From: Octopus sinensis
Taxonomy: Eukaryota
DNA: 64,000 bases
Assembly (NCBI RefSeq): GCF_006345805.1
Contig: NW_021832123.1
Coordinates: forward strand, 1 to 64,000
Direction: 5' to 3'
How positions within the stretch are numbered: position 1 is the first letter of the stretch; each line of letters begins with the position of its first letter. Shown one piece after another: positions 1 to 39,203 of this stretch. The translations under genes and the position numbers were made by a program. The notes beneath the pieces were generated by a model that was not told the origin of the DNA, ran no database searches, and saw only the letters and a program-made list of their open reading frames with translations.

Positions 1-1042
1 TACCCCTTCTAAGCTTGCGTTTTAAAATTTTCAACAAGAGTTGCATAATTATTAGGATCCATACTCAGTTCTCCACGTGTGTGATATCAATCGAGCTCGT
101 TTTTTCAGGGAAACAGTTCTAAACCTTTGTCGACAATATTCACTTTTTAAAGCTCGTTTAAAACCTTCTTACCCCTTCTAAGCTTGCGTTTTAAAATTTT
201 CAACAAGAGTTGCATAATTATTAGGATCCATACTCAGTTCTCCAAGTGTGCCATATAAATCGAGCTCGTTTTTTCAGGGATCAGTTCTAAACCTTTTTCG
301 ACAATATTCACTTTTTAAAGCTCGTCTAAAACCTTCTTACCCTTCTTAAGCATGCGTTTTAACATTTTCAACAAGAGTTGCATAATTATAAGGATCTATA
401 CTCAGTTCTCCACGTGTGTCATATAAATCGAGCTCGTTTTTTCAGGGATCAGTTCTAAACCTTTTTCGACAAAATTTACTTTTTAAAGCTCGTCTAAAAC
501 CTTCTTACCCTCTTTAAGCATGCGTTTTAAAATTTTCAACAAGATTTGCGTAATTATAAAGATCTATACTCAGTTCTCCACGTGTGTCATATAAATCGAG
601 CTCGTTTTTTCAGGGATCAGTTCTAAACCTTTTTCGACAATATTCACTTTTTAAAGCTCGTCTAAAACCTTCTTACCCCTTCTAAGCATGCGTTTTAAAA
701 TTTTCAACAAGATTTGCGTAATTATAAAGATCTATACTCAGTTCTCCACGTGTGTCATATAAATCGAGCTCGTTTTTTCAGGGATCAGTTCTAAACCTTT
801 TTCGACAATATTCACTTTTTAAAGCTCGTCTAAAACCTTCTTACCCTTCTTAAGCATGCGTTTTAAAATTTTCAACAAGAGTTGCATAATTATAAGGATC
901 CATACTCAGTTCTCCACGTGTGTGATATCAATCGAGCTCGTTTTTTCAGGGGATCAGTTCTAAACCTTTTTCGACAAAATTTACTTTTTAAAGCTCGTCT
1001 AAAACCTTCTTACCCCTTCTAAGCTTGCGTTTTAAAATTTTC
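1..1042. repeat. Tandem satellite, 168-169 bp unit, about 6.2 copies visible (may extend left of the window)
   Basis: Unit starts (tacccYtYt) at 1, 170, 338, 506, 674, 842 and 1011; copies differ by scattered substitutions; the last copy is cut after aaaattttc. Confidence 0.97.
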
Positions 1043-1391
1043 CCTAACCCCTAACCCTAACCGCTAACCCTAACCGCTAACTCTTACCCCTAACCCTAAC
1101 CCCTAATCCCTAACCCCTAATCCCTAACCGCTAACCCTAACCTATAACCCTAACCTATGACCCTAACCCTAACCTAACCCTAACCCTACCCCAACCTAAC
1201 CCTAACCCCTAATCCCTAACCCCTAATCCCTAACCGCTAACCCTAACCTATAACCCCTACTATGACCCTAACCCTAACCCTAACCCTACCTTACCCTAAC
1301 CCTAACCCCTAATCCCTAACCCCTAATCCCTAACCGCTAACCCTAACCTATGACCCTAACCCTAACCCCTAACCCTAACCTATAACCCTAA
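1042..1391 (+). repeat. Telomere-type (CCCTAA)n tract with variant repeats (CCCCTAA, CCGCTAA, CCCTAAT, CCTATAA, CCTATGA)
   Basis: First CCCTAA at 1042-1047, last at 1386-1391. The C-rich strand is +, so telomere polarity points left. Confidence 0.95.
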
Positions 1392-1429
1392 CATAAAGAA
1401 AATTTATTTAAATTTAGAAAGAAAAAATA

Positions 1430-4400
1430 TTAGTTCCATATTTTTACGGTCTTATCGTAGGAGGATGTTAGAAGGAAACTAGTTGTGTTACTTATGAGTA
1501 GTTTAATGTCCGTGATAATACTACGGTGTCCCGATAGGTCTCTATCTCGGTTTCTTGATCGTGCAGTAGTTTCGTCGACTATATTTTTCTCATATATTTC
1601 TGAAAATTCTGGATAGTTCTTTTCGGAATATGAAATGTTGGAATATGACGAGTCAACCCAGCCCATTGATAGAACTTTGCTCTGAGAAATATTGGATAGA
1701 TTCCAATTGCGGATTCTCATGTCTGAGCCAACAGTGAGCAGCATGGACTGCTGTCTGTGCTCGTAGTTTACCATGCGAGATATGAAATTCTTTTTCCACG
1801 AACACCTGACATTGTCAATGTCCCCAATCGTAGTTATTCCCGTCGATACATGCGAGTATGGGACATTCCACAACATTATTGAGTTGTCACTATTATAGGA
1901 AGCTATCACTCCATGTTTATCCAGAGGGTTTACTATAACTGAACGAACTGCTCGACGCACATGGTCTGCAGGTGTTAAAATGGAAAATGGAGATCTGAAT
2001 CGAATATCCCAACACACACAGTTTCCGTGACCTGTTCCAACCACCAGCCACGACTTGGAATAGTCCACGTCAAAGCAGCTGCATCTGCCGTACTTCAGAG
2101 GAATAAAGTCGAGCGAAATCGGTTTGGGGACTCGGAGATCAATCATTGAGAGAGCCCCGTGACTAGTCAGTGCTATTACATAACCATTGGCACAAGAATC
2201 CCCACACACCGAAATCCCGACAGCCTTGCCCGAATCGGGGACTACGCTGGTTGTGACGTTGGTCTTTGTACTTTTCTCCACGTCATAAATGTGAAGCATC
2301 CCTGACTGACTGAGGACAACAAAGTTCCGGTCGTGTTGGAAGTGCTCCACAAAGAGAGGCTCCTTCACACGAGGGTGGGCACAAACATCAGCAATGGGCG
2401 TGTAAGATCCTCCCAGAATATCAGCAATTGACCAAATGCAATATTTCGAGTCCGAGGATGCAGACACAAAGTAGTTCCCGTTGTAATCTGCACTCAGACA
2501 GTGAACTGGAGCATCGTGGTAGAGAAGAGTGGTCAATTGAGTCCCCTGAAAGGTACCTTCCGATGCCCGAAAGCAGGTGGATGTACAACTCCTCCTCAAC
2601 TCATTAAACATGTTTTCTTCCCGTTTATTGCAGAGGAATTGGTGGAGATGTGCCGAATAATCATTTGGGAAGTACTTTCCTTGACTACCACTCGTCTCCA
2701 CCCGATTGCTCGACAATTGCACCAATTGGTCTGCCAGACTAATCGTCTTGTACAAATCCGTTTCAGAATCAGAAATGGGGCTTCGGTGGAGGACGTCCAG
2801 GAAATATGTTTTTAGTTTCAAAATTAATGAAACGTCGGAAAATGTCATTTGTTGAAATGTTCTCTTGAGAGTAGAGGACAAATCGTGAAATGCATCAATC
2901 GAATTCCAATCTTCATTTGCTCCACCAACTCTGGTTTCCAAAACAGAAAACAACACTCCCGGGTCGTTCGAAGACTTGGTAACACAATCAATCAAATCCC
3001 GTGCAATGGGAGGGGCAATTGCACGTGCAAATGTGACTGCATCCTCAATCAGATAAAACCGTTGGGCGACAATTCCGTCGAGATGAGGAAGGATGACACA
3101 CTGACTGAAGGCAAACCCAACACGTCTGGAGAGTGTGTGGACAAAGTGGATGGCTGATGTGCGGATCATTGTGTTGGGGTGTATCAAGAAGGGGATGATT
3201 CTCTTGAGCAATGACAGTAGCAGGCCAGTGTCGAGCATATCTTTATCCAATATCGCTTCAATGCAATCAATTGTTTCGTGGATAACAAATTCCTCACAAT
3301 CGGACAACCCTGCCTCGAAAAGTGGCAATAACATGCAAGATGTGTCATACAGCTGATTGAATATTCCTGGGAGGACTCGGAAAAACTCAGCCCTCACCTC
3401 CCAGCAGTCCTTTGTGTGTGCCAGATTGATAATATGCGGCATTATTGTCACACAAAAACGCTCCTCTCCAAAGAAATCAAAAATCTTGGCCATCGAACTT
3501 CTGAGGAGCTCCACGATAACGTCATAACTTTCGGTTATTTGGTGACTGTCGGTTTCTGATATTTTCTTGTAGATGGACGAGTCACGAGTGGTTAGCAGAG
3601 CTATCACCATGTCTCCAAAATACTCAGAGGACATTTCAAACTGTGAATCAACTGTCGCGAAATCAGTTTTGCTTAATTGCCGCGAAATCATTTCGAATAA
3701 ATCACCAATTCTTGCTGCCAAAGCCAGGCGGATCAAAGGCTTGTCGGTGTGGCACAAATTGTGGTAAGTGGGGATGATATAATCCAGCAATATGTCCTGC
3801 GACAGGCAGCTCGGCAGGGCAATCAAATAGTCCGTCACGAGGTTGATGGCTTCCGACGAGACATTCGAGTCCGCGTCCTCAAAAAACATAAAAATGTGCG
3901 GAATTGTCCGTTCAAAAAACACGGAGGCGTTCAAACGAGGCTCAAACAATTTGAAGAGATCAAAGGCGGTGTATTTGGCCTCAGTGGACGCGAGGTGTGG
4001 GAGGAAGGCCGTATACAAGGACAATAGTATCACATACGAGTTTCCACTCCACTCGGCAGCCCCCCCTCCCAGATGGCTCGTGATGTCCGCCCATCGTCTG
4101 TGCATGTCCGTGATTATATAATCGGCCGTGGCGTTGACAGTGGAATTTATTTGTTCCATGAGTTGCATGAGATAGGCGTAGTGTGGCTCGGGGAAGTATT
4201 TGTTTATGTAATATTCCGGCGTGTGTCGGTGAGTTGGGTTCTCCGCAATCATCGAACTGACCATTTCCCGGACATGAGGATCCCCAATCTCGTTGATGGT
4301 GGCCTGTGCGGCCTGATTGTCAGGTTTGCCAATGGCAGTGTTGCCCGACAGAACATAGAGCGGCTTCCCGTCCAAGCACAGTTCGAGGACAACACATCCA

Positions 4401-5116
4401 AGGGAGAACACGTCCATGCACCACTCCCCCTCGTCACTCAGGTCGATGAATTGAATGTCCTGTGACTTGTAGAACCGTTCGGTGGCAGTGTAACACACTC
4501 TTCGGTGGGACGTGTCGAACAGGAATGTGTACTCAGTCGGGTTCGACTCGGACAGGTAGACGGGCTTGTAACTCGCAAAGTCGGTGACGAACACAAAGTT
4601 CCAGCTCGTGAGCATTATGTTGTCGGGTTTGAGGTCGCCGTGGTAGACCTACGACTTAGTCACCCACATACTCGATTCCGTTTGCACAGGTTGAGGGCGC
4701 ACAGGAGTTGAAATATTATCCACTTTTTCTCGACCCACAAAAGCGGGGGGTTTAAATGCATTCTGTCGAGGAGAGTAGTCTGGAGGTATGGCCTCATCAA
4801 ACACGCCACTTTGTCTTTGATCACCGCCTTCGAATGTTTTTATTTACTCAACTTTGTAAGGCAGACAGTTTACGGACGCACACAGCGCTCGTTCAATGAA
4901 ACTTGTCTTGTCTTTTATCTTTTTAATCGAATTTAACATTTCGGGGGTGAAGGACGTGAATTTGACCACATAGGGCTGTCCTTCGAACATTACTTTTCCC
5001 GTCTTGAAAAATAGTGTTCTTCCAAGTGTTTTCGTGAGACTAAAGTTGAAGGTTTGGCAGTATTCCTCCAGACTTTCCGACTTTTGATCAGCCGGGACTA
5101 TTAGTTTGTTTCCCAT
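1430..5116 (-). CDS. PIK3R4: Vps15 / PI3K regulatory subunit 4 (kinase-like, HEAT and WD40 domains)
   Basis: N-terminal MGNKL myristoylation-type start at 5116. Introns 4828-4852 (25 nt) and 4649-4671 (23 nt) restore CLPYKAVIKDKVACLMRPY and VYHGDLKPDNIMLTSWN..TDFASYKP. HEAT and WD40 regions lie in the 1061-aa ORF. Confidence 0.95.
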
Positions 5117-5212
5117 TGGATTGTACACAAAAATATGACTCAATAAATTCAAATATATTTAAGAGCAATTACAAAAATGTACCTAAATTCCATAATTAAT
5201 TAAACAAAAAAG

Positions 5213-6675
5213 CTATAAAGAGGATTGAGCGTATTCGAGGAGGGCAGGAGTGGCAACGGGAATGAGCGAAGTGACAATCAACTGTCTGTCAATGGAGAGT
5301 GCCACACTTTGGAAATACTTTGTGCTCATTTTATGCAAGTACGACAAGAACCCAGCCTCCACCAAATGCTCGAACACCTTCGACTGACCAACCAGGCGTA
5401 CCTTGAAGAGCACTTCTCGTCCACACCTCGGAAAGGAGGGTCTGTGGCGACACACACTATCGAATTCTACAATGACAAAACAGCAAACCCTTATAAATCA
5501 TATCAAATGTAATATTCTCACTGTACTTGCCCGACAGATTACACACCACCAGCAGCAGAATTATTTCCACTGTCGGGAGACCTCAAATAAGAGCAAATAT
5601 AAGACCAGTCAGGTCTATGATCTTGTAGTCCGCCGAAATGATATCCCAGGCGGAGATAACATCCTCCACTCGCAGGTAGTCGTCGTCCCTAGCATGGGCG
5701 CACACCAAACACTAAACAACTAATTCAAATATTGAACCAATAATTTATTTATTTGTTCAAGAGATTTAGAATAATTAAATTGCATTTTCAATATATTCAA
5801 TATTTGACAGTCAGTAAATAACGACTTAAATTAGTTTTTTACTTACCTTTATATAGGAATTCCATTTTTTCGACGTTATCGATAGGTTTTGTGGAATCTA
5901 TATAAATTTAATTAATAAGCTGTTATACCACTGATTTAGCAGACAGCAGAGACACAGTGAAATCAACGAATTCGTGGAATGAAAAAGTATTAATCAGCTG
6001 GAGAACCCTCCCCGAAAATCGAGACCTCACTCGTTTCTCCAATAATTCGACAATATCCTAATAACTGTGGCACTGGCTAGATTACAAGTCGCCGGGTAGT
6101 ACCAATAACCAAGGTGGGCACCTCCCCGACGTGAGTGGCCGAAAAGAGGGAGTAGAGCATATTCTGGCGCTGTCGATTGGCCAGCAAGTCAATCCCCTCA
6201 ATCAGAAACACAATCATTTTGTCTGGAAGAATAAACACGTCCACAACCTTGTCGAGCAAAGTTGACTACTGTTTGCATGTTGCTCATAAAATTGGTCTTG
6301 AATAGGAAAGGACAGTACTTGGTTGCACTCCTCGCCGAATATTGCCGACAACTGGTGGGCTGCGTCTGCAAAGGCGGCCTTGTCGTCGTTGTATAAATTG
6401 CCTTGCATCAGTGCGGAATACATTACAGTGCAGTCGTACTACATTCACTTGATTGTCTGTGCATAGAATATCGCTTTCCAGTCGATTTAGTAACTGCTGT
6501 GCAAAGTGGTGGAATACTGTTGTTTTGCCGCTGCCTTCCGACCCGACGATTATTATTGAGTCACTGACGTTGCAGTCGATTAGATTCTTCAAACTATTTT
6601 TTAATGAACTTGATTTATATTTTAAGTATACTTGTATGTCGAATCCTGCCACTTTATTGATGTACCACGAGACAT
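5213..6675 (-). CDS. ORC4: Origin recognition complex subunit 4 (AAA+)
   Basis: Walker A IIIVGSEGSGKT; RQNMLYSLF; DIVELLEKRVRSRFS; C-terminal KVFEHL..ALLEYAQSSL. Several 21-34 nt GT-AG introns. Confidence 0.88.
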
Positions 6676-7059
6676 TTTATACAATTGTTTGTTTCTAAAT
6701 TGATTTTTAAATTTAATGTGTTTAATTGGAGTTAATATCTTACTAGTATTTGTAAATTGCCTTATCTTTTGTGGATATATAGTAAAACCTCTTTTTACGC
6801 CATCTTTGATAAGAAATTATGGCTGTAATTCTTTGTTAAAGTGAGGAGAACAAAAATCCTCAACAAATTGAGTTAAAAAAGCTACGAATATATTATCTCT
6901 TACCAAAAGAATTGGAGATGATACACCTTGCAAGTATCAAGGTTGTTTGAACCGTTCTTACATGTAATTTCCTTGTGACAATCTCCTCTAATCCCCATCT
7001 CACTTGCTAAAATATATCTAGTCAGTCAACACAAGTGGAAAAACTCATTTAATCATTGC

Positions 7060-8345
7060 CACTAAGCCAGTCCTTCCCGATTCGTTTTGAGTTCGCATCC
7101 CTAAAATTTTGAAAGTCAACCTGGCACCCCCATTTTTAAATCTAGCAGAAAATTTTATTACAAAAATCATTTAAAAAATTATTTAGGTTCCTTGAGATTT
7201 TTCTTGCCTTTTAGTCTTAATTCTTCGAAACGCGGTTTTTTGTTTGCTAGTGCAATTCTGAGATCTTTTTCAGTGCTAAGAGAGTTTCTGTTCTTATTTT
7301 TTATATATAGTAGAGATGAAAATCCAGATTCACATAGCCAAGTTGTTGCAAATAGTATCAGAACTTCCAGTGCTTTCTTTTGAAGTTTCGGGAATCCTGC
7401 TTGCAAACCGCATCAAAAAACCTTCAAAGAGTTTGAGTCGTACAACATTTTCAGTGATGTAGATCCTTGCAATTCAATCAAATTGTCTTAACTTCGTTTT
7501 TATCATGCATCTTTTACATTTTGAAAACAAATGGATTAACAATTCAGGTATCAGAATCTTCGATATTTTCGAGTAGAAAATATCCATCAAATGAATTTTT
7601 TAAACATTCAAGATGATTGTTGATTTCTTTTTTAATAGTTTTATCAAAAGTCAAGTCGGAATCAATAGCAACTTTATCCAACCTTGAAAAATAGGCAAAA
7701 TTATTGTCTTGAATACGGCGAGTCCATAACAAAAGTTTATTCCTGAAGGCATTTTGATTGTCAGAAACATTAATAATGCTTATCCCTTTCCCTTGAATTG
7801 AAAGATTCAACTCGTAAAGGTGATTGAAAATGTCATCCAAATATGCTTGGATTGAAATTTTGATCGAAGAATTCTTTATGTCCGAAACAACTTGATTAAG
7901 AATATCATCACTGATACAAATAATTCTATCGCGGATAGAATTATTTGACAAAGGAATCTGCTGCAATTTTCGTGAGGCGTCTGGACCCAGAATTGTTTTC
8001 ACAATTTCCAATGCATATGGTTTAATAAGAATCTCGCCAATTATTATTATTATTATTGAACCAGAAAACCACCGTCATAGCCAAAAGAAAGAAGAATTCA
8101 GGTGATCCCAGCCTCCCTCAGCAGTTCGCGCAGCCTCTCCCGATGTTCCGCCGTTGTCCCGACGCATTTTCGGTACGGACGGCTTCTTCGATTTTGCCAC
8201 TTCATATGCTACTTGGAATGATGATAAAAGTAACTTAAATTTTCTTGCTATATATTTTATTTGTAAATCATTATAATATATGTAAAAGTAATCATGATTT
8301 TTAAAATCGTTCCAGGTACCCCCTAAAAAATTTCAAGTACCGCAG
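7060..8345 (-). mobile_element. Decayed hAT (Buster/Charlie, ZBED5/8-like) transposase remnant
   Basis: IPLSNNSIRDRI, LNLSIQG and FATTWLCESGFSSLLYIKNKNRNSL..DLRIAL are Buster-type motifs; the frame is broken by stops and frameshifts. Boundaries approximate. Confidence 0.82.
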
Positions 8346-8479
8346 GAAGCACTGCACTAAAGAAAACTTGTGGAAATAACGCCTCATCAACCAGAACAGT
8401 TTGAATTGCGAACGACTACAACCGCTGTACATGCAGGTTGCAAATTTTTTAATTCTATCCACGCTTCTCTCTTGTGGCT

Positions 8480-8735
8480 GTCAAGCGCGATTTCACGAAC
8501 AGTTAATTCACACTACGTTTTCATTCTCCTGAAAAGCAGACTACATACGGTGCTTGCACTACTAGCTCAGACCTGATCCTTGGGCGTAAATGCAATCAGC
8601 TTCGTTCAGGAGATCGGGTCTCGCATGTCCGCTCTCACAGGCGACTCCCGCGAATCAAGATGGTTTTTTGAGCGGATATTCCTCACGATAGTACGCTCTA
8701 ATTCTTTCTCGATCGCGTTAGCTTCCCGCCCGTTT
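8480..8735. ncRNA. Candidate structured non-coding RNA, family unassigned
   Basis: CpG-rich island without a credible ORF. Nested complementary pairs 8484-8491/8712-8719, 8525-8533/8605-8613 and 8628-8634/8670-8676. Confidence 0.3.
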
Positions 8736-8808
8736 AATTAATCAACATTAATTTTGACGAATACTAGATGATGAATTGGAAAAATAATCTAATAAAATAA
8801 ACTAAGAT

Positions 8809-8889
8809 CGCTGCGAGCAGGATTCAAACCTGCGCGGGTTACCCCAACGGATTTCGAATCCGTCGCCTTAACCACTCGGCCATCGCAGC
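8809..8889 (-). tRNA. tRNA-Ser, anticodon CGA
   Basis: GCTGCGA/TCGCAGC acceptor stem, D-loop TGGCCGAGTGGTTAAGGC, ACGGA-TTCGAAA-TCCGT anticodon arm, long variable arm, GCAGG-TTTGAAT-CCTGC T arm, G discriminator, downstream T runs. Confidence 0.93.
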
Positions 8890-9231
8890 GTTTCTTATGT
8901 TCTTGTTTAAAAAAGGAGGAATGAATACCTTTAAATGGTTATTATTGCCAAATTAGAATGAGTAGATTGTTAGTTTCATTAATCAAAATTATTTGCAAAT
9001 AATTTCTTCTGGTAGGAAGAATAAACTTCCAAATGACCCATCTTCGAATTCATATCGCTTAAAAAAATATGTTTTTCTTTACCATTTCTAGTTCTGTTTC
9101 AAACCGTCGATAAATTATTTTAAACTTCTTGGGTTCAAAATTAGGGTCGATTGTAGTTAGAGATGTAATGAGTTCGCCTTCACTCAGTTCTGACGTTCCC
9201 TTATTTTTTAAATTAAACATATAATTTAATA

Positions 9232-10500
9232 TTAAAATTGATTTACCGTAAACTTAACCATCGAAATCTCTTCCTCATGCTGACTGTTGATATCCACGAC
9301 CACACGTTTGGTAAAAAGGACAGTAAAGTGGTCGATTGAATATTTCCCATCAAAATGTTGTATTTTGAGTGTCTGGGGCTGAGAGGTTATCATTTCCTCA
9401 ATAATGGGGATAAATTCTGTTGATGACATTTACATACTCATTTTTTGGAATATCAAAGAATAATTTTCATTTCTGTGGGATATCCAATGACCGACAATGT
9501 TCATGATTAATACGTTTATTCAGGATTGTATTTATTCTAATAAACTCAATCAATACTCGACAAATAACCTTAATTATACAAAATTGTGTTACTCCTGTAT
9601 TCTGTTCTCACACGAATAGCCTGGAATGTCAAACCTATCTCTAAAATGACATCCCAAATTAAGAATTGGCACAACATATTTTTTAATCAGTCTCCTAAAC
9701 TGCTGACCCAAATAGTCTTGATTTCCCGACATTAATCATTCAGAGACATCGCGAAACAGCACTAATAATCTCCTCGAACCAGTCAAACTCTATCCCTGGT
9801 TGGCAAACGGACACAATCTCTTAGCCTGTGATTCTACTGAGATTAAATATGTCAGACTCATACGGCAAAACTAATATGGTTTCCATCCTCTCTCATGAAA
9901 GCGTAATGGGGGAAAATTTTTCTTAAATGCATTGACATGTTAAGACAGCACTCGATTCTATCTGATTTCCTTTCCTACACAAACATGTTGGGCTCAACCA
10001 TGAGAGGTGGGAAACGCCCTGATGGGATGACCATGTTGAACTGTAGAATTTGCCTGTATAGGACACGATCTGCAAAAACACCAACGCGTCTACTTTCCTA
10101 AACCTCTCGATGGCGACTCCAAGACACGTCTTCTTGCGCTTTTTGCAAAATTTCTTTGACCTTTGTCAGCTGGTGATTAAAAAAACTTTCTTTGTCATTC
10201 TCTGGCAATTGTAAGCCAATTTATTTTCAGAGTAGTTAATGGAATTTAACATGTCATTGTCGTGGACTGTATTTTCAAATTATTACTAATAGTCCATTTT
10301 GTCTACTGTTCTCATTCAGACATCTCATTATTGTTCAAGTCGGATTGGAATTTAAAGATGCCACAAAAATATAAAATGCTGCCAGGAAAACAAAAAGGAT
10401 GGACTAATTCATGCCAATTGACTAATTAAGTTATTAATGCATTATCCCCGAGTGAATAAATTACTTCCTCTATCATTCACATATTTGGTTTGGCAGTAAG
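9232..10500 (-). CDS. Spliced protein-coding gene of unknown function (possibly type II membrane protein)
   Basis: Open exon-like stretches (ENDKESFFNHQLTKVKEILQK; LMSGNQDYLGQQFRRLIKKYVVP) separated by GT..AG micro-introns; hydrophobic segment near 10340-10400. Ends uncertain. Confidence 0.4.
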
Positions 10501-10686
10501 CAAATTCGATCCACTGTCTTCTTTTCAAACAGATATCCCTCTTACGGAAAAGAAAACAAAACTTGATCAAGAAAAAAATATTTAGGTATTGATTGACTAT
10601 TTATCAATATAATAAAATTATTTATTAAAATAAAATTGTATTGGTTTAATAAATTGTGTAAAAACCAATAAATTAGTTTGTGGGAA

Positions 10687-11775
10687 ATGGAGTCAACTAA
10701 TCAGGCCATTCTGACAACTGGTACGAGAATTCTATCAGAAATCCTCGAATCCCGACACAAGGCAGTCTCCAAAGGGTGCCCAAACTATTCATTTCTCTAG
10801 ATTAAAGCCAGATATGATACACGGCAAAATCCACGGTAATTTACTTTAGAAAACATTTTAGACTTTTTTGAAATTACGTACAAAATCAGCAATCCGAAGG
10901 ATAGTCGACAGAACGTGCGAGTTAGTGCTCCCCCCGACCCCCTCAGATCGAAATGCAGTTCCCCCTGATGAACAAACTGGACAAAATAATCCAAGGCCCC
11001 CTCAAAGACTTTTACGGGGACTGCATTTCCTTCCCTTCCGGTTGGTGTGGTCAAAGCAGTGCAGGCAGCACGGCCGTGCTGGACTACAATTTGACTGAGG
11101 ACGGGCTCGACAAGCTCAAGAAGGCGGAACATCTCAAACGCACGTGCATTCGTGGACTTGTCTCGAACTACATCGAGGGGGCCTCGAAAGGAGAGAAGCG
11201 AGACAATCTGACACTGAGTGTGGGGAGGAGTGACAAACTGTTGTGGGTGTGACTGACTGTAGTTACCTGCAAACCACGGGGAGTATGTTTTGTGCCATCT
11301 TTGCCATTGCCAACGATGACCCCGCCTACTTCCTCTTCCTCAGACAGTTCGCCCAGGAGTTCAAAAACCTGCAAAAATACAACAACACGGCCCCCGCTGT
11401 GAGTTACTCAGAACGAGACCCCCCGAAGGAACTCGACGTGTTCAATGTGGGGGCTCAGCCGAATATTTTCTACATCACTCTGAGTGACTGCCCACTCAAT
11501 AGTGTAGTGGTGGACGAACGACACTTCACGGAGAAGGGACGGCAGGTGGTGGCCGACATGGTGACAATCATGCCCATGCAGATATATTACACTGTGTCCA
11601 ACTATAATGTACTCCTCTTGAGGGATGGTAGATGTTCTTCATCTCCCGCCTTCGAGACCAGAGTGTCATGTTGATGAAGAGGATCAACAGATGCAAGTAT
11701 GCCAGGCCCGCTGAGAAGAAGACTGCTGGGTGCCTGTTGCCCATTTATCGTAGGGGTAAGACTATTCCGGCATAG
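10687..11775 (+). CDS. ARPC2: Arp2/3 complex subunit 2 (p34-Arc), divergent
   Basis: DFFEITYKISNP, AEHLKRTC, FAQEFK..TAPAVSYSERDPPKEL and terminal ARPAEKKTAGGKT (after a 24-nt intron) follow ARPC2 motif order. Confidence 0.8.
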
Positions 11776-11879
11776 TCCTCCGAAACACTATTTGACTAAT
11801 ATGGATATTCCTTAAATTAAAAGGATTGAACATTCTTGTAGTTAATAGTCCAATTTTCAAAGAGACACACAATTAATAA

Positions 11880-12360
11880 ACAAACTGTGTCAAACTATTT
11901 CTACGATTCACCGGGAATTCCACAGGGTGACTTGCTGTCCCCTGTTTTGTTAATCGTCTACCTAGAGGCAGCACTAAGAGATTTTAGGCTTTTTGTGGAC
12001 AATAGCAAAAACAAGGAGATAATACATGCCAATGATTTCGACTTGGTTTTTGACGACGCTGAAACCCTTCGGCATATTATTGAAAGACTGCCAAATATAT
12101 TTTCTAAATGTTTTCTAATCATAACAAAACTGAATACACGAAAATTGATCAAGCTTGATGAATCGTGGAGAATTAAAAAAGTCGGATCACTGCTTGGCTA
12201 CTCTGAAGATGTCGCCCAGATAGAGATACTATCAATCGCTGCGTATTATAAACTTTTAAACATTTGACGTCCAAGAAAACTAAATATATATAGGTTAGCA
12301 GGGTGATCCGCTGGGTCCTGTGCTTTTTGTTATGAGCGTCAACAGTATCACCCAATCGTC
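11880..12360 (+). mobile_element. Decayed non-LTR retrotransposon RT fragment (copy 1)
   Basis: GIPQGDLLSPVLLIVYLEAALR and IIHAND (YADD-equivalent), followed by stops. Confidence 0.8.
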
Positions 12361-13699
12361 AATAATATTTTTCGCCGTCCGAATTACACCCAAATCTATT
12401 CTCGCTGCTTCTATGAGTCCTTTTGTTCTTGAAGGCTCACTGTCTTGAAAAATCTCAAAGATATCGAGCCTCATGTGGTTTTTTTTCTTTTTCTGAAACT
12501 ACCTTTTCGCCCCCCAAGATCTTCTACACGTTGGCCTTGCATGAGATTTTATTCAGACATTATTCTCAGAAACCTTTCCGAACGAAAATTGTATGAAGAT
12601 TATTCAGTTGCTTGTGGTCGGTGGGAAGCCCAGTTTGGTTCGAGGCTGCCCAGTTCTCCATCTATTCAGCGGCAGTGTGACGAGATGCCAGGCGACTTTC
12701 GAAGTTCTGGTCTCTGTCTCCGATCAACACCGACTCGCTGGCTTACGTGCAGGTCGCTGTCGAAGCTGCAATGTTTGGTTAAAGGCTCTCCCTTCCATCG
12801 GGAATGTGATGGAAATGATTGCTTAAGAATTGCAATCTCCCTCCGTGTCAGACTGCAGATCTGTCAGGCCCACAAATGCCGCTGTTGACGTGTACAGTTT
12901 TTACCCTCTGGCTTCGGACTGCCGCTCGTGCCTCTCGCCACAGTGAACTTAATCATTCAGAGAGCTCTCTCTTCTGCAGGTGTCCCGTCAATCCTCGAGC
13001 AAGTTGGACTGGAGAGAGGAGACGGCAAACGCCCAGATGACCACCTTCCCTTATAAGCAGGGAAATTCCTTATTTGAGACTCCACCTGCTCAGACACGCT
13101 CTTGCGCGGAAATCTGTCCGCTGTCAATCCTCGGCACGCTTCGAGACTGGCCGTGTCTCCTAGGCCATTAACTAATTAAAATCTCTCGCTTTGCTTTCAA
13201 TATTGATCAATATAAGTCTTACTTTTACGGGTAGCGAACGAGATCAATTAATCACAATATTATATCTTGGATAAATATGGATTTGCACAAATATCGTGTC
13301 TCAGTAGGACATTACGGCCTAATCTTCATCAAATTTGCATTTCAGCCTTCCTCTCATTTTTCCTTCGTCGAGAACATGCTTTTATATACACTCTGTTGAT
13401 TCCTCGTTTTCAGTGGATTCACTTATTTCAGCCACTGAGATCTTGCAAAGAAAAGGAAGGACTCACCAATGACTCACCCGCCCCTGCAGAAAATGTGCGG
13501 GAACAAAAGAAGAACGTTAGGGAAAATGATGACAGTCCTTAGAGAAGCTGGGATCACCTGATTAGTTATTTTGGGTTTTTAGTGGTCTTGTTTGAATAAT
13601 AATATAAATCAAGTTGGACGGGTATTAAGAAATTATCAAACCGTGAGATATGAAATACGTGAATATGAATTAAAATCGATTATGTAAAAAATATAAATT

Positions 13700-15065
13700 A
13701 ATAATAAATTGCGCTCGTAAGTAGATATGTGTTCTATGTGCGCTGGATGGGAGTCTGTAAGAACATTAGTAGAATGGCTTAAAGGTTGAATTAATAATCA
13801 AATATAAGCAGGCGGTCTCAAAGCAATTCAATTCCTACAACAGGAATTACAAAACGAAGACGAGAAGAAAAACGAGATTATGCTTCTGACCGAAAACGCG
13901 AGGTAAACCCACCAAGCACACGCAATAGGGCCGAACTGGCAATCCAGCAGTCTGAGATCGAACAATTACGTCAGGAAAACGAAAGACTAGTAAGCAATGA
14001 GGCAACTTAGACTAAGCAAATGGATAGTCCCACGAAAAGACCACCAACCTTCGAATCCTATAAAAACGAATCGGTCGCCACCCCACCGAAGCGACAGAAA
14101 GTCTCATTTGTACGCAATCTGGCCAATTAACCAAACAGAAAATCCCCGTGGACGAATCGGTGGTGTCTTCTCCGGCCAAGACCAAAATGTGGAAGAAAAG
14201 TCCATTGCGAGGACTGTCGAATGTGCTGAGAAGGAAGCCCTCCTTGTTTGTGAGCACAATCTCAGTATTCCTCATTTGTATGTGCAGATGGACTCGGTCA
14301 ACATGCAACTGTCGGGGCCCCCCTTCGTCCCCCCTGCCATTGTACTCTTTCTCTTTACTTCAGACTGCCTGCTTCGATCAACTCGAACGGAGGGGGAGGG
14401 GGAATAAACGACTCCACTTGAATTCAGGGTTGTCCCCCCTATTCATTCCAGATTGACCCGGCAAGTAATGAAACTGCAGAATAAAGTAGTGTCGGTGGGG
14501 AACATGAATGAGTTGGTTGGTGAGTGAGTGGTCTATGCCTAGTTGGAGTCCCGCAGTTTGGACGTCATTTCCTCGTGTCTCAAACTACTTCTCAAGTGCG
14601 TGTCCGAACCATTGGTGTGCCACTTCCACTACCGAGCCTTCATGGACCTGACGAGTGGTGACTGAGTGAGAGTGTGTAGGGTACAAGAAGGGGGGACAGG
14701 CAGGCAAGATAAGTGCGTTGATGAGGGAGATTCCCCCCAAGAATAGAGACACCATCGCAGCCCTCATCATTCATCTCAAAAAGTGTGGTTGGTTGTGTCA
14801 TGTCGAGGGTGTCGACTATCAGTGGAGTGAGTGGGGATGACTTGTGTGACGAGTTTGCCCCCATTGTGTTGGCTGAGTCCTCCGAAAACATTCCTCGCAG
14901 GAGATTTGATGAAAAAATGGTTTTACTGTCCTCATGATGTTGCAGGTTATGAGGATACTGTATTCCCAGCCCACTTCCTTGTGGACGGCAGTATTGAATA
15001 CTGGGGGGAATTCCATCAGTAAATGTGTGGCTAACCTTGTAGAAGTGGAGGAAGAAGTGTTTTAA
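13700..15065 (+). CDS. RhoGAP with N-terminal coiled coil, RACGAP1/Cyk-4-like (5' end uncertain)
   Basis: Coiled coil [20 protein letters not shown]; GAP motifs [38 protein letters not shown] and EFAPIVLA; many 21-38 nt introns. Confidence 0.7.
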
Positions 15066-15829
15066 TTATTAAATTTGTTGTATTTGAGGAGGATGGCATT
15101 GACTATTAGTTTCTCGATAGGCTCGTCGTGTGTCTCCACTGATTCCCCCTCCATTGACCTGTCGAACAGAACGACGCTGAATGCCCTACTCCCCAACAAA
15201 TTAGCCACGACGAGTGACTGCTGGTTGTCCTCGAATGACTTGCCCACCTTCTCTCTAAGCTTGCTCGAGTCAGTCTCCAATTTGAAGGTCACAACAAAGG
15301 CCTGAGGACTCCACAATGAGGTGACCAGATGAAGTGTTTTGGGCACTCTTTTCAAATGAAGCACCAACTCGTCCGTGTGGGACTCCATTTTATGTTCAGG
15401 CATTCTTTCCAGTGGTAGATAAAAGTCGGAGACAGCCGCAGCCAAGTACAGGAGTGCTCGCGACCCCAGCACAGCCACAGCCTTCGAACAAATCCTGAGG
15501 TACCTCAAATATTCCCAGACTGTGACGAACTCGACCTTCAGGAGATTGTCGTGTTTGCGTGGTTGAAGGGAGTCTTTGCGGTGAAGGAAGATGACGGCCA
15601 TGTCATTTGCCATGAAGTGGTCGGCCGAGGACGAGCCCCGTCGGCCAGTGCTGAAGTTGTCGATGAATCGGACGGGGTGTCGTTCGAGGGGCACGCGGGT
15701 GCCACCAGATGTGACCACCACTACTCCCCTCTTCTCTTTGTGGTTGTTTATGAACTCTTCTATTTCTCCTCCATCTACTCTCTCTTCTCCTACATCTTGT
15801 GACAGAAATTGCATTAATTCCTCTTCCAT
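15062..15829 (-). CDS. PPCS: Phosphopantothenate-cysteine ligase
   Basis: Intronless 255-aa ORF with [39 protein letters not shown] and FKLETD. Confidence 0.95.
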
Positions 15830-26523: not shown

Positions 26524-28021
26524 ATGGGTCGTGTCGTTAAAAAAAATAACGGAAAGGTATATAATTCAACCGAGTATATAATAGAACAAGCAACTCAAGA
26601 CTGTAAAGCAAAGCAATGTTAAATTTGGTGGCAAAAAGAATGTTAGAAATAGTTTGTCAATTCTTAGAAGATGCAAAAGAAGCAGTTCAATAAGAACAAC
26701 TCCAAAAACTCTTCGTTCGTCAGCAACCAAAGTGGCTCCAATAAAGGAAAGAAGGGGAAAGTGCAATTCGCCCCAAACACAAGCATTGACAGCAAAAAAA
26801 CCGTATGGCCCTTCTAAACTAAGTTAGCCTCAAAAATCTTTTCAAAAGCAACAAAAAACCCCCCAAACGTCAAAGGTAGGCCAACAGTCTAACATTCAGT
26901 CTTCCGTGTCTCAAAGGAAGGCTACTCCTTTCCCAAAGGGTGGGAAAGCTAAAATTGTGGAAGAGGTGGAGTCGGACGATTTGAGTCAATCGGACGTGTC
27001 ATTCCCAGAAAGTGAAGAACAGAGTGAGGTGTTCGAGGAGTCAGGGGAGGATAGCATGGATGTGTCCGAGGAAGAAGAGGCCCCTCCCGTTCAACCACCC
27101 AAGAAGCAAAAGTCCCAGCCACAAAAAGTCGAAAAGATGAAAGTGGCGAGTCCAGTGTCTAAGCAAGCCAGCCAACCCGTTAAGAAGCCAGAAATGGGTG
27201 AGAAGGGTACAAAGCGGAAGAGGGATGAGGAGACTGTCCCCATGTCGGCAGAGGAGTTTACAGTCCAGAACGACCAGAAACGTCTCTTTGTCACAAATTT
27301 GCCGGGCAATGTGACTGAGGACGAGATCAAATCACTCGATAAAAATATAGTCGATTTTGTGATATTGGCGGCATATCGTAAGAGGAAGTGGTATGTGGTG
27401 TCCATTATTCGTAGTTCGGTCATTCTGGTATTTCCCTCGGAGGCTGTGGTGGAGCGTGTTTTTCCGTTGTTGCAGGGGAAGGATGTCCGCGGGAATAAAT
27501 TGGTGGTGGACTATGTGGGGCACAAGAACAGCAAGCGAAACCCGCAAGACAGTATTCCTTGGTTGTGTAGTTCAGTGGGTCCAATTGTGGATAATCGTCT
27601 GTATGTGGGTAATCTGGGAGAGCACTGCAACGAGGCCAGTCTGAAGGCCATTTTCACGACTGCCACCAAGATTTCAGTTCCCGTTAAACGGAGACATAAG
27701 TTGATTGTGTTAATCACGGAATTTAGTTTTGGGTTCGTGGAGTTTGCTGATTTTCCGGCGGCCCTGGAAGCCTTAAAGAAGCACAATTATTCGGTGTTTA
27801 AGGGGGAGAAGATGATTGTCCAGTTTGCACGGGCCAAGACAGAGGAGAGCAAGTCGAAGGAGGATTCCTCTTCTAAAAGAGTGAAGGTGGAGGAATCGGA
27901 GAGTGAGGGAATTGATGAGGAGAGTGGAGAGGATATCGGGGACAGTGAGGATGATGATGAAGAATTGGATGATGAGAGTGGAGATGATTTGGAATCATTT
28001 GATGAAGAAGAGGAGGATTAA
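26524..28021 (+). CDS. Nucleolin-like protein (basic and acidic tracts, two RRMs)
   Basis: RNP2 motifs LFVTNL and LYVGNL, RNP1 FGFVEF, acidic N- and C-terminal tracts; upstream exons joined by 24-28 nt introns. Confidence 0.8.
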
Positions 28022-29606: not shown

Positions 29607-32107
29607 TCAAATTATTACAGACTCTCCTTTGAGCAGCTTCCTGACCGCCTTTGTTGTATACTCAGCTGATTCCCCATTTTTAATATTCTTTCTATTCACG
29701 ACTAAGTTATTTCCAAATGTTTCTTCTGTTTTTTTGAGTTTGCAAGGTAATTTATCATATTTTTTCATCAGGAAATAAACTACCGAAACAAGTGCAATTC
29801 CAACAGCACTCCATATCATAATTTGGGTGACTGTCTCATTGTAGTAGTTATTCGAAGAGTTGTAAAATGAATTGAGTGTATAAAAAACCAATTCGAGAGA
29901 GTCTTTGTATGTGTAACTTGTTTCAGATTGAGCTCGAATATTTACTTTCTGAAATGTATTCTCATTTCTTCCTGTTTTCCTTAAATATATGTCCCCGGTT
30001 TGGTGGTCAATAGAAACCAAATTTCCACCTCCGTCGAGACAATATTCCAAATTGATGTTAAATTTGTTTATTCTGTTGTTTTTTATGACCAAAGCAGATC
30101 CATTTCGAGGAATTTGGACATATTTTGATTTGAGATTATACGCAAAGAAATATTTTTGGTATTTTCTGACCAGATGTACAACACAGAGCATGCTGTTGGA
30201 CTGCGAAGGATTTCCTCCGTCCTTTACATGTACTTTGAACTCGAGAGATTGAGCTCGACTTGAATTGTGATTTCCAAGATACAAATCTCCGTTTTTTCTG
30301 TCAATTGTTACGTTTACTGAGTCTGTTTTAATCTTGGTGATTGAGTATTCTATTTCCCCATTCACCCCGGAATCAGAGTCGAATGCTCTGACTGACCCCA
30401 CCAACGAAATTGTTCTTATTTCTAAGGGGACCAATATTGAACAAGTGGGAGTTAGGAATTCTGGGCGATTGTCGTTGATGTCTATTATGTCGATTGTAAA
30501 CTGCTTTGTGACTTGACTGTTGGATGGTTTGGAATCGGTCAGATTGATTTGAATAACGATTTTTTTAATCATTTCAAAATCAAAGACCACTTTTGAGCGG
30601 AGCTCACATGTCTCCTGCTCGAGACTCACGTAAGAATTATCCTCCATTTTGCAAATCCACGTTTTTTTATAATCAAGGTCACTAACTTTAATCTTACCGA
30701 TTAACGAGCCAATTTGCTGATTTTCGAAAATTTCCAGTTTATCTTGGGTTGATTCAAAAAAGGGGGGATTGTCATTTATGTCTTGAATTAAGATCTAAAA
30801 AGTTATAAATTAGCCAGAACTTTTATAGTTTTTGAAGTTTTTTGTGAAGGAAATCCTTCGTCCGAACAAATAATCGGAATTTGCACTGAGTCCGTTTTTT
30901 CCCTGTCAAAACTCGTTTTTGTAATAACCGAATATAAATTTTCGTTTATCACTACATTGACCAATGACGACGGAGAAAAACAAACGGCACGTTTGGGCCC
31001 TTTACTGTGTTCATAATACACGCGAAATGTCTTTATATTCTCGTGGTTCTTTTTTTCGAAAATTGAGGCCACGTTTCCTGTCTCCATAAAATCGATCACA
31101 GGTTTCAGTCGAAAGTGTTTTTTCACGTATAACAAAAAGGTGAATTTAAAATTCTGATTTTTTTGAGTTGTTTTTACGAAATATATCAGTGGCTGATTTT
31201 GTGCAGACATTCTTTTAAGGAGTTTGATTTTCCCATTCTGGATGTCAATTTCGAGATTTTTTGACGGATTTTCTAACAAATATTCGCACTTTCCAGTTAT
31301 TGGTGGCTCATTAGTCCATAAAATGCTTCCAAAGTCCATTTGATCGTTAATTATTGCGACGTTGACAAATTCTCCCCAAAAAACTAATTTTTCCGTAATT
31401 TTTATGACAAGCAGTAATTCGCTGTAGAAGGAGGGGTTGTTTTGATCCCAAACCATCAAAATCAACTCAAAAACTTGCCTGCTTTTGATTTGTTGAGTTA
31501 TTTTTAAAGTAGGAATGTCTTTTTCGACGGAAAAGAACTCATTTTTAACAGAGAGCGAGTATTTATTGTTTGAATGATTCGAAGAATCTTTATCAGTGGC
31601 ATTTACCAGTCTAATTTCAAATCCGACATTCACTGTAAATGGTATTTCAAGTTCTAGAAACGCAATGGACAGTTCAGGAGGGTTGTCATTCACGTCCAGT
31701 ATCTGCAAAAAGTTATTTAGATTCCATTTTACTGTAAACTCTATCTGGAAAGACCTTGAGGACCAGTTCTCATACTGTAAAATATCCACGTGTGCTACAA
31801 AGGAACACAGTGGACTATTGTCGCAGAGTTCTTCTCTGTCGATTCGTTGTTTGATCTGGAAATGCATAGAATGCATACATACTTTGATATTTCCGAATGA
31901 GGTGAATTGCAGGTATGCCGCAAGTACATTTTTGGTCGAAAATTGGAGGGAAGAGATGTCCCACGTGTCGAATATGTGAGGATCCGCATCGAGCAAGTCG
32001 TTTTTAAGATTTGCAATTTCAGTCCCAATTGGTAGTTCCTCCTTCAGCGAATATTTGAAAACAAGTGAGGAGAATGGGACACAGAAAAGTAGCAGTTGGA
32101 CAAGCAT
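29607..32107 (-). CDS. Protocadherin-like type I membrane protein
   Basis: Signal peptide, EC1 YSLKEEL..IDREELC, DVNDNPP, DINDNRPEF and AFDSDSGVNG Ca-binding motifs, TM IMIWSAVGIALVSVVYFLM; two ORFs joined by introns near 30650-30830. Confidence 0.9.
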
Positions 32108-37917: not shown

Positions 37918-39203
37918 AGTTTACGCTTTATTCTAATCAATGACATTAAATTTGAAATTGCTTTTATTAAACGTTCTTTGGAGTATTCTGGCGGTGAAAA
38001 TGTTAACATGTATTAAAAAAACTGTAGAGACATGAAAGATAAAAAATTAATAAGTGTCCCGAATTTTAAAAATGCCAATCAAATCGTCCAATTGTCAAAC
38101 ATTCCATTCAATTTTAGATATTTAGAATCCAACAAAATTACAACTTTGAGCCCTAATTCTTTTCCTGAAATGACTTTGCTTGAGAGATTGTAGACTCTGG
38201 GATTCATTTTAACAGAGACCTCGGATTCAACGAAATCACTACAATCAGTCTGGGGACTTTTGATATTGTGACAAAACTCGAATATTTGTTAATTATTGTG
38301 TTCTAATTAGATATTTGAATAATAACAAACTATCGGATTTTGAAAATGGAATATTCGATTTTCTTACTAATTTGAGATTAATGTAACTGATATATTTACA
38401 AAATATAGAAATTTCAACCACAATGAAATAAAAATTTTGCCCAATGTATTCGGAAAGACACGGAAACTCTTAGATATGTAATTCTTTTGTATAAGCTTGA
38501 GATATGGCCGCTACAACCCAATAGAAACCCTGAATTTTGGAATTCTCTTCACGTGTCCTCGTGAAACTTTCATGTAGGAAATACAATAATTTCATTTTAG
38601 AAATCTCTTCTTTACTCAGCCCGACGTTGTGTGTGCGTACAACTACTCTAAGTACTATTTTTCGCTGTATTCCTTTTTGATCACCATCAGATACTTATAC
38701 CCACCCCAAAAAGAGAAGGTGATAATAAAACAGAAAGTCTACATATTTACAGAACAAGATTCTGTTTATCAGAGGTTAGTTTACATTTTACATATCAGCG
38801 AAAAATATGAAATTGTAAATTGTTCCCAAAATGATTCTGAAGAATGTAGAACTGTTGTGCAAAGTTGTTCTAATTTATAATTTTTTGAGAATGCAATTCA
38901 CCGAAATTCTCGGAAAAGACTTTGAAGCCAACAAATGTCAAGATACAAGTAATACTGATAACAAAATTTCTCACATTGATATAATTCAACACAAAACAAC
39001 ATTTAATACTACTAAAACCTCGATGAATACTAAAACTTCGATGAATACTAAAACCCCGATGAATACTAAAAAAATGTCAAATGTCGGCTCAAATAGTAAA
39101 TGTAATTTATTCATTCAGACAAGACAATCATCTACTCGATTACCGTCCCCTTGTTTTTTGTGATTGTTATAATTTTGTTAATTTTGTATATTTTCATTCA
39201 TAG
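37918..39203 (+). CDS. Extracellular LRR protein with Thr-rich stalk and C-terminal TM helix (5' end uncertain)
   Basis: Phase-2 introns give LRR exons: YLESNKITTLSPNSFPEMTLLERL, DLGFNEITTISLGTFDIVTKLEYL, YLNNNKLSDFENGIFDFLTNLRL. NTKTSM x3 stalk; TM IIYSITVPLFFVIVIILLILYIF. Confidence 0.85.

What the first reader, a model, noticed from the sequence alone, without database searches (positions are those of the whole stretch)
1..1432. Internalised telomere: satellite array lies distal to a (CCCTAA)n tract that directly abuts a gene
Seen: the order is 168-bp satellite, then 350 bp of degenerate CCCTAA, then VPS15. With the C-strand on +, the telomere points left, so the satellite sits outside the telomere and there is no subtelomere between tract and gene. 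The satellite breaks mid-unit (aaaattttc|cctaa, 1 nt shared). Inference, three alternatives: (a) chromosome ends capped by satellite through recombination (ALT-like); (b) a pre-positioned telomere seed at a programmed breakage site, where satellite is eliminated in somatic cells and the tract becomes the new end; (c) an old end-to-end fusion. Developmental DNA rearrangement/elimination has been reported for Dicyema, which makes (b) attractive if the taxon guess is right. This is the best candidate for an undescribed system here.
Basis: partly seen in the sequence, partly recalled or inferred. Interest (0 to 1): 0.82.

Follow-up and report, generated by a model that had tools for sequence, protein, structure and literature searches.

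The report
Fossil telomere tract beside satellite
A decayed, internally duplicated stretch of telomere repeats lies between a 168-bp satellite and the end of the VPS15 gene, at the very end of a parasite (dicyemid-like) contig inside an octopus genome assembly; it looks like an ordinary relic of a former chromosome end, not evidence of a new system.

Summary
A 168-bp satellite occupies 1-1042. A degenerate CCCTAA tract occupies 1042-1392. VPS15/PIK3R4 lies on the minus strand, with its stop codon 37 nt from the tract and its AATAAA signal 11 nt from it.

- Window base 1 is base 1 of contig VCDQ01000770.1 of the Octopus sinensis assembly, so the satellite sits at a contig end.
- The contig is not octopus. 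Six introns of 22-28 nt and very divergent proteins point to a dicyemid, a known O. sinensis parasite.
- The tract is not a live telomere. Its longest perfect run is 3 units, purity shows no gradient, and an exact 45-mer recurs three times at 100-106 bp spacing.

Best reading (0.6): an interstitial telomeric relic of a chromosome end once healed just past VPS15, later joined to satellite DNA. This is a known kind of structure, as in the yeast X-ITS-Y' arrangement and human subtelomeric islands. An assembly artefact (0.15) cannot be excluded without reads.

The programmed-elimination "seed" idea (about 0.07) and satellite capping (0.05) have no support here. They remain testable with public reads.

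The parts
1..1042 (.). 168-bp satellite array: 6 full monomers (168-169 bp) plus a 31-nt partial monomer. AT-rich (34% GC). It runs off the start of the contig.
   Evidence: TRF. Monomers in register. Monomers differ by 0-11 substitutions and 0-3 gap columns, so this is consensus-quality sequence. No copy elsewhere in the window. Window 1-14615 equals contig VCDQ01000770.1 1-14615.
1042..1042 (.). Satellite/tract junction, ...AAAATTTTC|CCTAA..., 31 nt into a monomer. One base (C) could belong to either side.
   Evidence: Direct reading.
1042..1392 (+). Degenerate telomere-like tract with the C-rich strand on +. 27 perfect CCCTAA units among about 58. Variants are CCCCTAA(T), CCGCTAA, CCTATAA and CCTATGA. 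The G-strand points 5'->3' towards the satellite.
   Evidence: The longest perfect run is 3 units. Perfect-hexamer coverage is 0.62 / 0.55 / 0.68 in the distal, middle and proximal thirds.
1100..1392 (+). Higher-order repeat inside the tract: three blocks (1100-1205, 1206-1305, 1306-1392), each opening with the same exact 45-mer CCCCTAATCCCTAACCCCTAATCCCTAACCGCTAACCCTAACCTAT.
   Evidence: anchors at 1100, 1206 and 1306; autocorrelation peaks at 100 and 106. TRF period 100.
1393..1429 (-). 37-nt 3' trailer of VPS15 with AATAAA at 1408-1403. The tract begins 11 nt after the signal.
   Evidence: The poly(A) site itself is inferred, not shown.
1430..5116 (-). VPS15/PIK3R4 gene: ATG at 5116, introns at 4852-4828 (25 nt) and 4671-4649 (23 nt), stop at 1432-1430, 1212 aa after splicing.
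   Evidence: Pfam. Splicing. Colinear alignment with Littorina PIK3R4 (39% identity over the N-terminal 314 aa). The best database relative reaches only 28% identity.
5900..6652 (-). Context: 5' part of an ORC4-like gene with introns at 6426-6402 (25 nt), 6318-6297 (22 nt), 6247-6223 (25 nt) and 6085-6058 (28 nt). The gene continues below about 5900. The DNA next to the tract is ordinary housekeeping-gene DNA, not a subtelomeric gene family.
   Evidence: The spliced product aligns colinearly with human ORC4 residues 38-229 (E = 7e-25).

Best explanation
The tract is an interstitial telomeric sequence: the relic of a former chromosome end.

Inferred history:
1. A chromosome was truncated, or eroded, to just beyond the poly(A) signal of VPS15.
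2. The end was healed with TTAGGG repeats, so the G-strand points away from the gene.
3. Satellite-bearing DNA was later joined to that end. Possible routes are break-induced replication, recombination with another chromosome end, or end-joining with about 1 nt of microhomology. The tract thereby became internal.
4. Without telomerase upkeep the tract decayed by point changes. It then re-expanded by tandem duplication of a block of about 100 bp.

The most likely present arrangement is a subtelomere: true telomere, then satellite array, then fossil tract, then the first unique gene. The assembler stopped inside the satellite.

Shown here: the order, the orientation, the degeneracy, the higher-order duplication, the abutment to the gene, and the contig end. 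Inferred: the healing event, the joining mechanism, and whatever lies beyond base 1.
For: - Single-orientation CCCTAA tract flanked by non-telomeric DNA on both sides.
- Degenerate: 27 of about 58 units are perfect and the longest perfect run is 18 bp. There is no purity gradient towards the distal side.
- An exact 45-mer recurs at 1100, 1206 and 1306, which indicates a tandem duplication that telomerase cannot produce.
- Satellite monomers differ mostly by substitutions, with a single 1-nt length difference between them, so the sequence is polished consensus and not one raw chimeric long read.
- The satellite is not an inverted copy of anything in the window, so it is not a fold-back artefact.
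- The satellite reaches base 1 of the contig, as expected where an assembler halts in an array.
- Degenerate interstitial telomeric clusters in subtelomeric regions, interspersed with other repeats, are a documented class. An internal telomere array in an assembly is read as an interstitial tract or a misassembly (PMC9498494).
Against: - This is one locus, with no reads and no second assembly, so the junction at 1042 is unverified.
- Only 1 kb of satellite follows the tract. That is little for a long-read contig if the array is long.
- What lies distal to the satellite is unknown. A true telomere, another chromosome arm, or nothing are all possible.
- The gene's poly(A) signal lies 11 nt from the tract. 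That is closer than a random break in a genome averaging about 13 kb per gene would usually give (67.5 Mb and 5,012 genes, PMC6736024). It hints at repeated erosion and healing, or at a directed break.
Confidence: 0.6

Rival explanations
1. Assembly artefact. The gene-plus-tract side and the satellite come from different molecules: a ligation chimera, or a wrong graph join at a contig end. The satellite might belong to another dicyemid locus or even to the host.
For: The junction lies 1 kb from the end of a PacBio contig of a low-abundance contaminant organism. Only 1,042 bp of satellite are attached. No other dataset in reach holds the locus, so nothing confirms it. The review PMC9498494 lists misassembly as the standard alternative for an internal telomere array.
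Against: The tract is degenerate and duplicated, which is not how a real terminal telomere caught in a chimera should look. The satellite sequence is consensus-quality with almost no indels. It is not an inverted copy of local sequence.
Confidence: 0.15
2. Programmed-elimination site. The satellite is germline-restricted. The DNA breaks at or near the junction in somatic cells, and the built-in tract serves as the primer or cap of the new somatic end.
For: Chromatin elimination and extrachromosomal circles are reported for dicyemid somatic cells (Noto 2003 and Awata 2006, as summarised in PMC6543705). The tract has the right polarity to cap the gene side. It starts 11 nt after the poly(A) signal of an essential gene, which resembles the tight ends of developmentally fragmented genomes. 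In Oscheius tipulae the break motif carries a 3-nt telomere-priming site (PMC13060919), so a built-in primer has a small-scale precedent.
Against: There is no stage, depth or read-end data. This is a single locus with no recurring motif to test. The known metazoan systems add telomeres de novo to sites that carry no telomere array in the germline (PMC9292451; PMC13060919). The decay of the tract, and its duplication pattern, look neutral rather than maintained. The D. japonicum genome paper assembled 67.5 Mb from mixed stages without mentioning elimination.
Confidence: 0.07
3. Satellite-capped chromosome ends. The ends are maintained by recombination of the 168-bp array, as in Chironomus or ALT survivors. 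The old telomerase tract is left behind.
For: The satellite lies distal to a decayed telomere tract, and the contig ends in it. Chironomus-type ends made of repeats of about 350 bp, and ALT back-up pathways, are established (PMC9498494).
Against: The canonical motif is still recognisable. Nothing shows that the satellite is terminal. No telomere motifs are interspersed within the visible satellite. Loss of telomerase is rare in animals outside Diptera (established knowledge).
Confidence: 0.05
4. Interior fusion point. An eroded, satellite-bearing end of another chromosome fused to this telomere. The tract now lies deep inside a chromosome, or beside a centromeric satellite.
For: It has the same anatomy as the best explanation. 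A period of 168 bp is typical of centromeric satellites (established knowledge).
Against: There is no head-to-head telomere pair: 0 TTAGGGTTAGGG in the window. This reading cannot be told apart from the subtelomeric version without sequence beyond base 1.
Confidence: 0.1

Closest known systems
Subtelomeric interstitial telomeric sequences: the yeast X-(TG1-3)-Y' arrangement and human subtelomeric (TTAGGG)n islands at duplicon boundaries
   Same: A short, degenerate telomere-motif tract pointing towards the chromosome end. It lies between chromosome-specific DNA on the proximal side and a repeated element on the distal side. It is read as a former end that was extended by recombination or end-joining.
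   Different: Here the distal element is a simple 168-bp satellite, not a Y'-type element or a segmental duplicon. The proximal side is the 3' end of a housekeeping gene only 37 nt away. Whether a true telomere lies beyond the satellite is unknown.
Chironomus telomere-associated complex repeats that evolved from simple telomeric repeats (Nielsen & Edstrom 1993, cited in PMC9498494)
   Same: Telomere-type short repeats reorganise into a longer repeat unit. Here a 100-106-bp higher-order block forms inside the tract.
   Different: There are only three blocks. The 168-bp satellite itself shows no telomere-motif ancestry. Nothing shows that these repeats cap the chromosome.
Nematode programmed DNA elimination with neotelomere healing (Ascaris break regions; the Oscheius tipulae SFE motif)
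   Same: A telomere capping retained, gene-bearing DNA, with repeat-rich DNA distal to it. The O. tipulae motif carries a 3-nt telomere-priming site.
   Different: In those systems the germline DNA carries no telomere array at the break. The array is made de novo and is pure. Here a 350-bp decayed array is part of the assembled sequence, and no germline-versus-soma difference has been shown.
Head-to-head fusion relics such as human 2q13
   Same: An internal telomere tract as the scar of a former end.
   Different: Those relics are inverted pairs of arrays. This one has a single orientation.

Membership tests
Interstitial telomeric sequence (ITS) | Tandem telomere-motif repeats with non-telomeric DNA on both sides | tested here: met
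   Satellite on the left, VPS15 3' end on the right. This holds for the assembly as deposited.
Interstitial telomeric sequence (ITS) | Degenerate variant repeats and repeat-type evolution (duplication), rather than telomerase-made homogeneity | tested here: met
   27 of about 58 units are perfect, the longest perfect run is 3 units, and an exact 45-mer occurs three times at 100-106 bp spacing.
Interstitial telomeric sequence (ITS) | Resistant to BAL31 and not at a physical DNA end | not testable with these tools
   Needs DNA or raw reads.
Functional terminal telomere | Array at the end of the molecule, with the G-strand 3' outward and nothing distal to it | tested here: not met
   The polarity is correct, but 1,042 bp of satellite lie distal to the tract.
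Functional terminal telomere | Distal repeats homogeneous, with variants confined to the proximal base | tested here: not met
   Purity is 0.62 distal, 0.55 middle and 0.68 proximal.
Head-to-head fusion ITS | Inverted (TTAGGG)n-(CCCTAA)n pair | tested here: not met
   TTAGGGTTAGGG occurs 0 times in the window.
Subtelomeric X-ITS-Y'-type organisation | The distal repeated element is shared among several chromosome ends and is capped by a true telomere | not testable with these tools
   The contig stops at base 1. The rest of the assembly cannot be searched here, and two metagenome scans for the satellite found nothing.
Programmed DNA elimination break site with telomere healing | Germline-versus-soma difference in depth, and reads carrying new telomeres at the site | not testable with these tools
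Programmed DNA elimination break site with telomere healing | A recurrent sequence motif at several break sites | not testable with these tools
   Only one junction is available. No second copy of the satellite or tract exists in the 64-kb window.
Satellite-capped (Chironomus/ALT-type) ends | The satellite forms the physical termini and canonical terminal repeats are absent | not testable with these tools
   Unknown beyond base 1.
Dicyemida (source organism) | Ultra-short spliceosomal introns (below about 30 nt) in an animal genome associated with a cephalopod host | tested here: met
   Six introns of 22-28 nt are supported by colinear protein alignments. The contig belongs to the O. sinensis assembly. 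D. japonicum was collected from O. sinensis (PMC6736024). Short introns are restricted to dicyemids and myxobolids (PMC13644364). No dicyemid reference sequence was available for direct comparison.

The most novel reading that the evidence does not exclude
In this dicyemid, the 168-bp satellite is germline-restricted DNA that is removed during somatic development. The built-in, gene-abutting telomere tract is what becomes, or primes, the new somatic chromosome end. That would be a pre-installed telomere at a programmed breakage site, which is not described in any animal.
Probability: 0.07. Interest if true: 0.85.

Novelty: new member of a known kind. Interest (0 to 1): 0.35.

Why it matters
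Nothing on dicyemid telomeres turned up in the literature search, and somatic chromatin elimination has been reported in these animals. This locus is therefore a concrete place to test that old claim with data that are already public.

If the ordinary reading holds, three modest points follow:
- Dicyemids use TTAGGG-type repeats.
- A chromosome was once truncated right up to an essential gene.
- The reference Octopus sinensis assembly carries at least one 246-kb contig from a parasite, which users of that assembly should know.

Tried and rejected
- Other datasets holding the locus. Exact-protein look-ups for VPS15 and PPCS returned only the same contig. A third ORF was not on record.
- Close relatives of VPS15, to compare the neighbourhood in another dicyemid. 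The best hit outside the window was 28% identical, so no orthologous locus was reachable.
- Two exact-pattern scans of JGI metagenome contigs for conserved satellite segments found nothing.
- Other copies of the satellite or tract in the 64-kb window: none.
- An RNA family in 1-1500: only one sub-threshold chance hit.
- A coding origin for the satellite: stop codons in all six frames of every monomer.
- Fold-back (missed-adapter) artefact: rejected, because the satellite is not an inverted copy of local sequence.
- Telomerase insertion at an internal break: rejected, because the two flanks are unrelated (satellite versus a gene's 3' trailer) and the tract is long and decayed.
- Walking to the other end of the 246-kb contig, or sampling other contig ends, was judged infeasible within the look-up limits.
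Full report
**What is in the sequence**

A 168-bp repeat fills 1-1042 (6.2 copies, 95% matches, 1% indels). A CCCTAA-type array fills 1042-1392.

The tract is far beyond chance. It holds 36 of the 42 CCCTAA hexamers on the + strand of the whole 64-kb window. No other 351-bp stretch holds more than one. The inverse dimer TTAGGGTTAGGG is absent, so there is one orientation only.

The satellite ends 31 nt into a monomer, at ...TTTTAAAATTTTC|CCTAA. A single C could belong to either side.

The ORF at 1430-4615 on the minus strand matches the VPS15-like helical domain (PF22956, 1.7e-18) and WD40 repeats. The gene starts at 5116 and has two tiny introns, at 4852-4828 and 4671-4649. It encodes 1,212 aa. 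The N-terminal part of the spliced product (residues 1-330) aligns colinearly with the first 312 residues of a snail PIK3R4 (39% identity). The stop codon is at 1432-1430. The AATAAA signal is at 1408-1403, and the first TTAGGG of the tract follows 11 nt later. So the gene does abut the tract directly.

**Where the window comes from**

An exact-protein look-up places the gene on contig VCDQ01000770.1 (246,139 bp) of GCA_006345805.1. A later octopus genome paper names that accession as the Octopus sinensis assembly. The reverse complement of the fetched locus equals window 1-14615. Window base 1 is therefore contig base 1, and the satellite lies at the very end of a contig.

The contig is not octopus:
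- The best VPS15 relative in 5.8 billion proteins is 28% identical.
- Six introns measure 22-28 nt: two in VPS15 and four in a neighbouring ORC4-like gene. Each is supported by a colinear protein alignment.

Among animals, introns this short are known only from dicyemids and myxobolid myxozoans (PMC13644364). Dicyema japonicum was itself collected from O. sinensis (PMC6736024). Cadherin, bHLH and RRM genes further along confirm an animal source.

**What the tract is**

It is not a living telomere:
- Only 27 of about 58 units are perfect, and the longest perfect run is three units.
- The share of bases in perfect hexamers is 0.62, 0.55 and 0.68 in the distal, middle and proximal thirds. The gradient towards purity expected at a telomerase-maintained end is missing.
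- An exact 45-mer (CCCCTAATCCCTAACCCCTAATCCCTAACCGCTAACCCTAACCTAT) recurs at 1100, 1206 and 1306. TRF sees a period of about 100.

That pattern is a tandem duplication of an already decayed block, which telomerase cannot make. The exact recurrence of the variants also shows they are real and not sequencing errors.

**Is the junction real?**

It cannot be verified without reads. Several points favour it:
- The satellite monomers differ almost only by substitutions, with one 1-nt length difference. The sequence is polished consensus, not a single raw long read.
- The satellite is not an inverted copy of local DNA, so a fold-back artefact is excluded.
- The attached tract does not look like a real chromosome end caught in a chimera.

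Other points count against it:
- The junction lies 1 kb from a contig end, in a low-abundance contaminant of a PacBio assembly.
- Only 1 kb of satellite is present.
- Nothing else in reach holds the locus.

I put an artefact at about 0.15.

**Most likely explanation (0.6)**

The tract is an interstitial telomeric sequence, the scar of a former chromosome end. The polarity shows that it once capped the gene-bearing side. Satellite DNA was later joined to it, and the tract then decayed and partly re-expanded.

Degenerate interstitial clusters in subtelomeric regions, interspersed with other repeats, are a documented class. A review states that an internal telomere array in an assembly is either such a tract or a misassembly (PMC9498494). 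The closest named parallels are the yeast X-(TG1-3)-Y' arrangement and the (TTAGGG)n islands at human subtelomeric duplicon boundaries (my own knowledge).

The simplest present-day layout is: true telomere, satellite, fossil tract, first unique gene. The assembler halted inside the satellite. The alternative, that the satellite leads into another chromosome arm (a strict fusion, 0.1), cannot be separated from this layout here. The head-to-head form of fusion is excluded.

**The more exciting readings**

Dicyemid somatic cells are reported to undergo chromatin elimination and to form extrachromosomal circles (Noto 2003 and Awata 2006, as summarised in PMC6543705). The tract begins 11 nt after the poly(A) signal of an essential gene. 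That is tighter than a random break would usually give in a genome averaging about 13 kb per gene (PMC6736024). This keeps the 'built-in telomere at a programmed break' idea alive.

Nothing here supports it, however:
- Known animal systems add pure telomeres de novo at sites that carry no array in the germline. The nearest precedent is a 3-nt priming site in the Oscheius tipulae break motif (PMC13060919; PMC9292451).
- This tract looks neutrally decayed.

I give the idea 0.07. Satellite capping of the Chironomus or ALT kind gets 0.05, because nothing shows that the satellite is terminal.

**Verdict**

This is a new example of a known kind of structure, found in an unusual and poorly known animal that is hidden inside an octopus assembly. 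Its main value is as a defined locus where public reads can quickly separate four outcomes: relic, artefact, live end and programmed break.

Noticed in passing
window 1-64000 (contig VCDQ01000770.1, 246 kb, of GCA_006345805.1): The contig in the Octopus sinensis reference assembly is not octopus DNA. It comes from a highly divergent animal with 22-28-nt introns, most likely a dicyemid kidney parasite, so the deposited assembly contains parasite contigs.
   Followed up: partly
window 4649-4671, 4828-4852, 6058-6085, 6223-6247, 6297-6318, 6402-6426 (minus strand): Six GT-AG introns of 23, 25, 28, 25, 22 and 25 nt in VPS15 and an ORC4-like gene. Each restores a reading frame that aligns colinearly with animal homologues.
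   Followed up: yes
window 7179-7406 (-), and perhaps 7544-8011 (-): A fragment matching the hAT transposase C-terminal dimerisation domain (PF05699, E = 7e-05). It is probably a decayed or domesticated hAT element about 2 kb from VPS15. The adjacent 155-aa ORF has no family match.
   Followed up: partly
window 1-1042: The satellite shows a hint of higher-order structure. Monomers 1, 2 and the partial monomer 7 share the AAGCTTGCG variant. Monomers 1 and 6 share GATATCAATCGAG. Monomers 4 and 5 are nearly identical. Too few copies are visible to fix a period.
   Followed up: partly
window 39010-39071: An 18-bp tandem repeat (TACTAAAACCTCGATGAA, 3.4 copies, 93% matches) lies in an AT-rich, ORF-poor stretch (28-40 kb, 30-36% GC).
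   Followed up: no
window 15062-15829 (-), 26906-28021 (+), 29607-32107 (-), 61885-62931 (-): Other genes seen by Pfam: a phosphopantothenoylcysteine synthetase-like protein (DFP domain), an RRM protein, two adjacent cadherin-domain ORFs (probably one gene) and a bHLH protein.
   Followed up: partly
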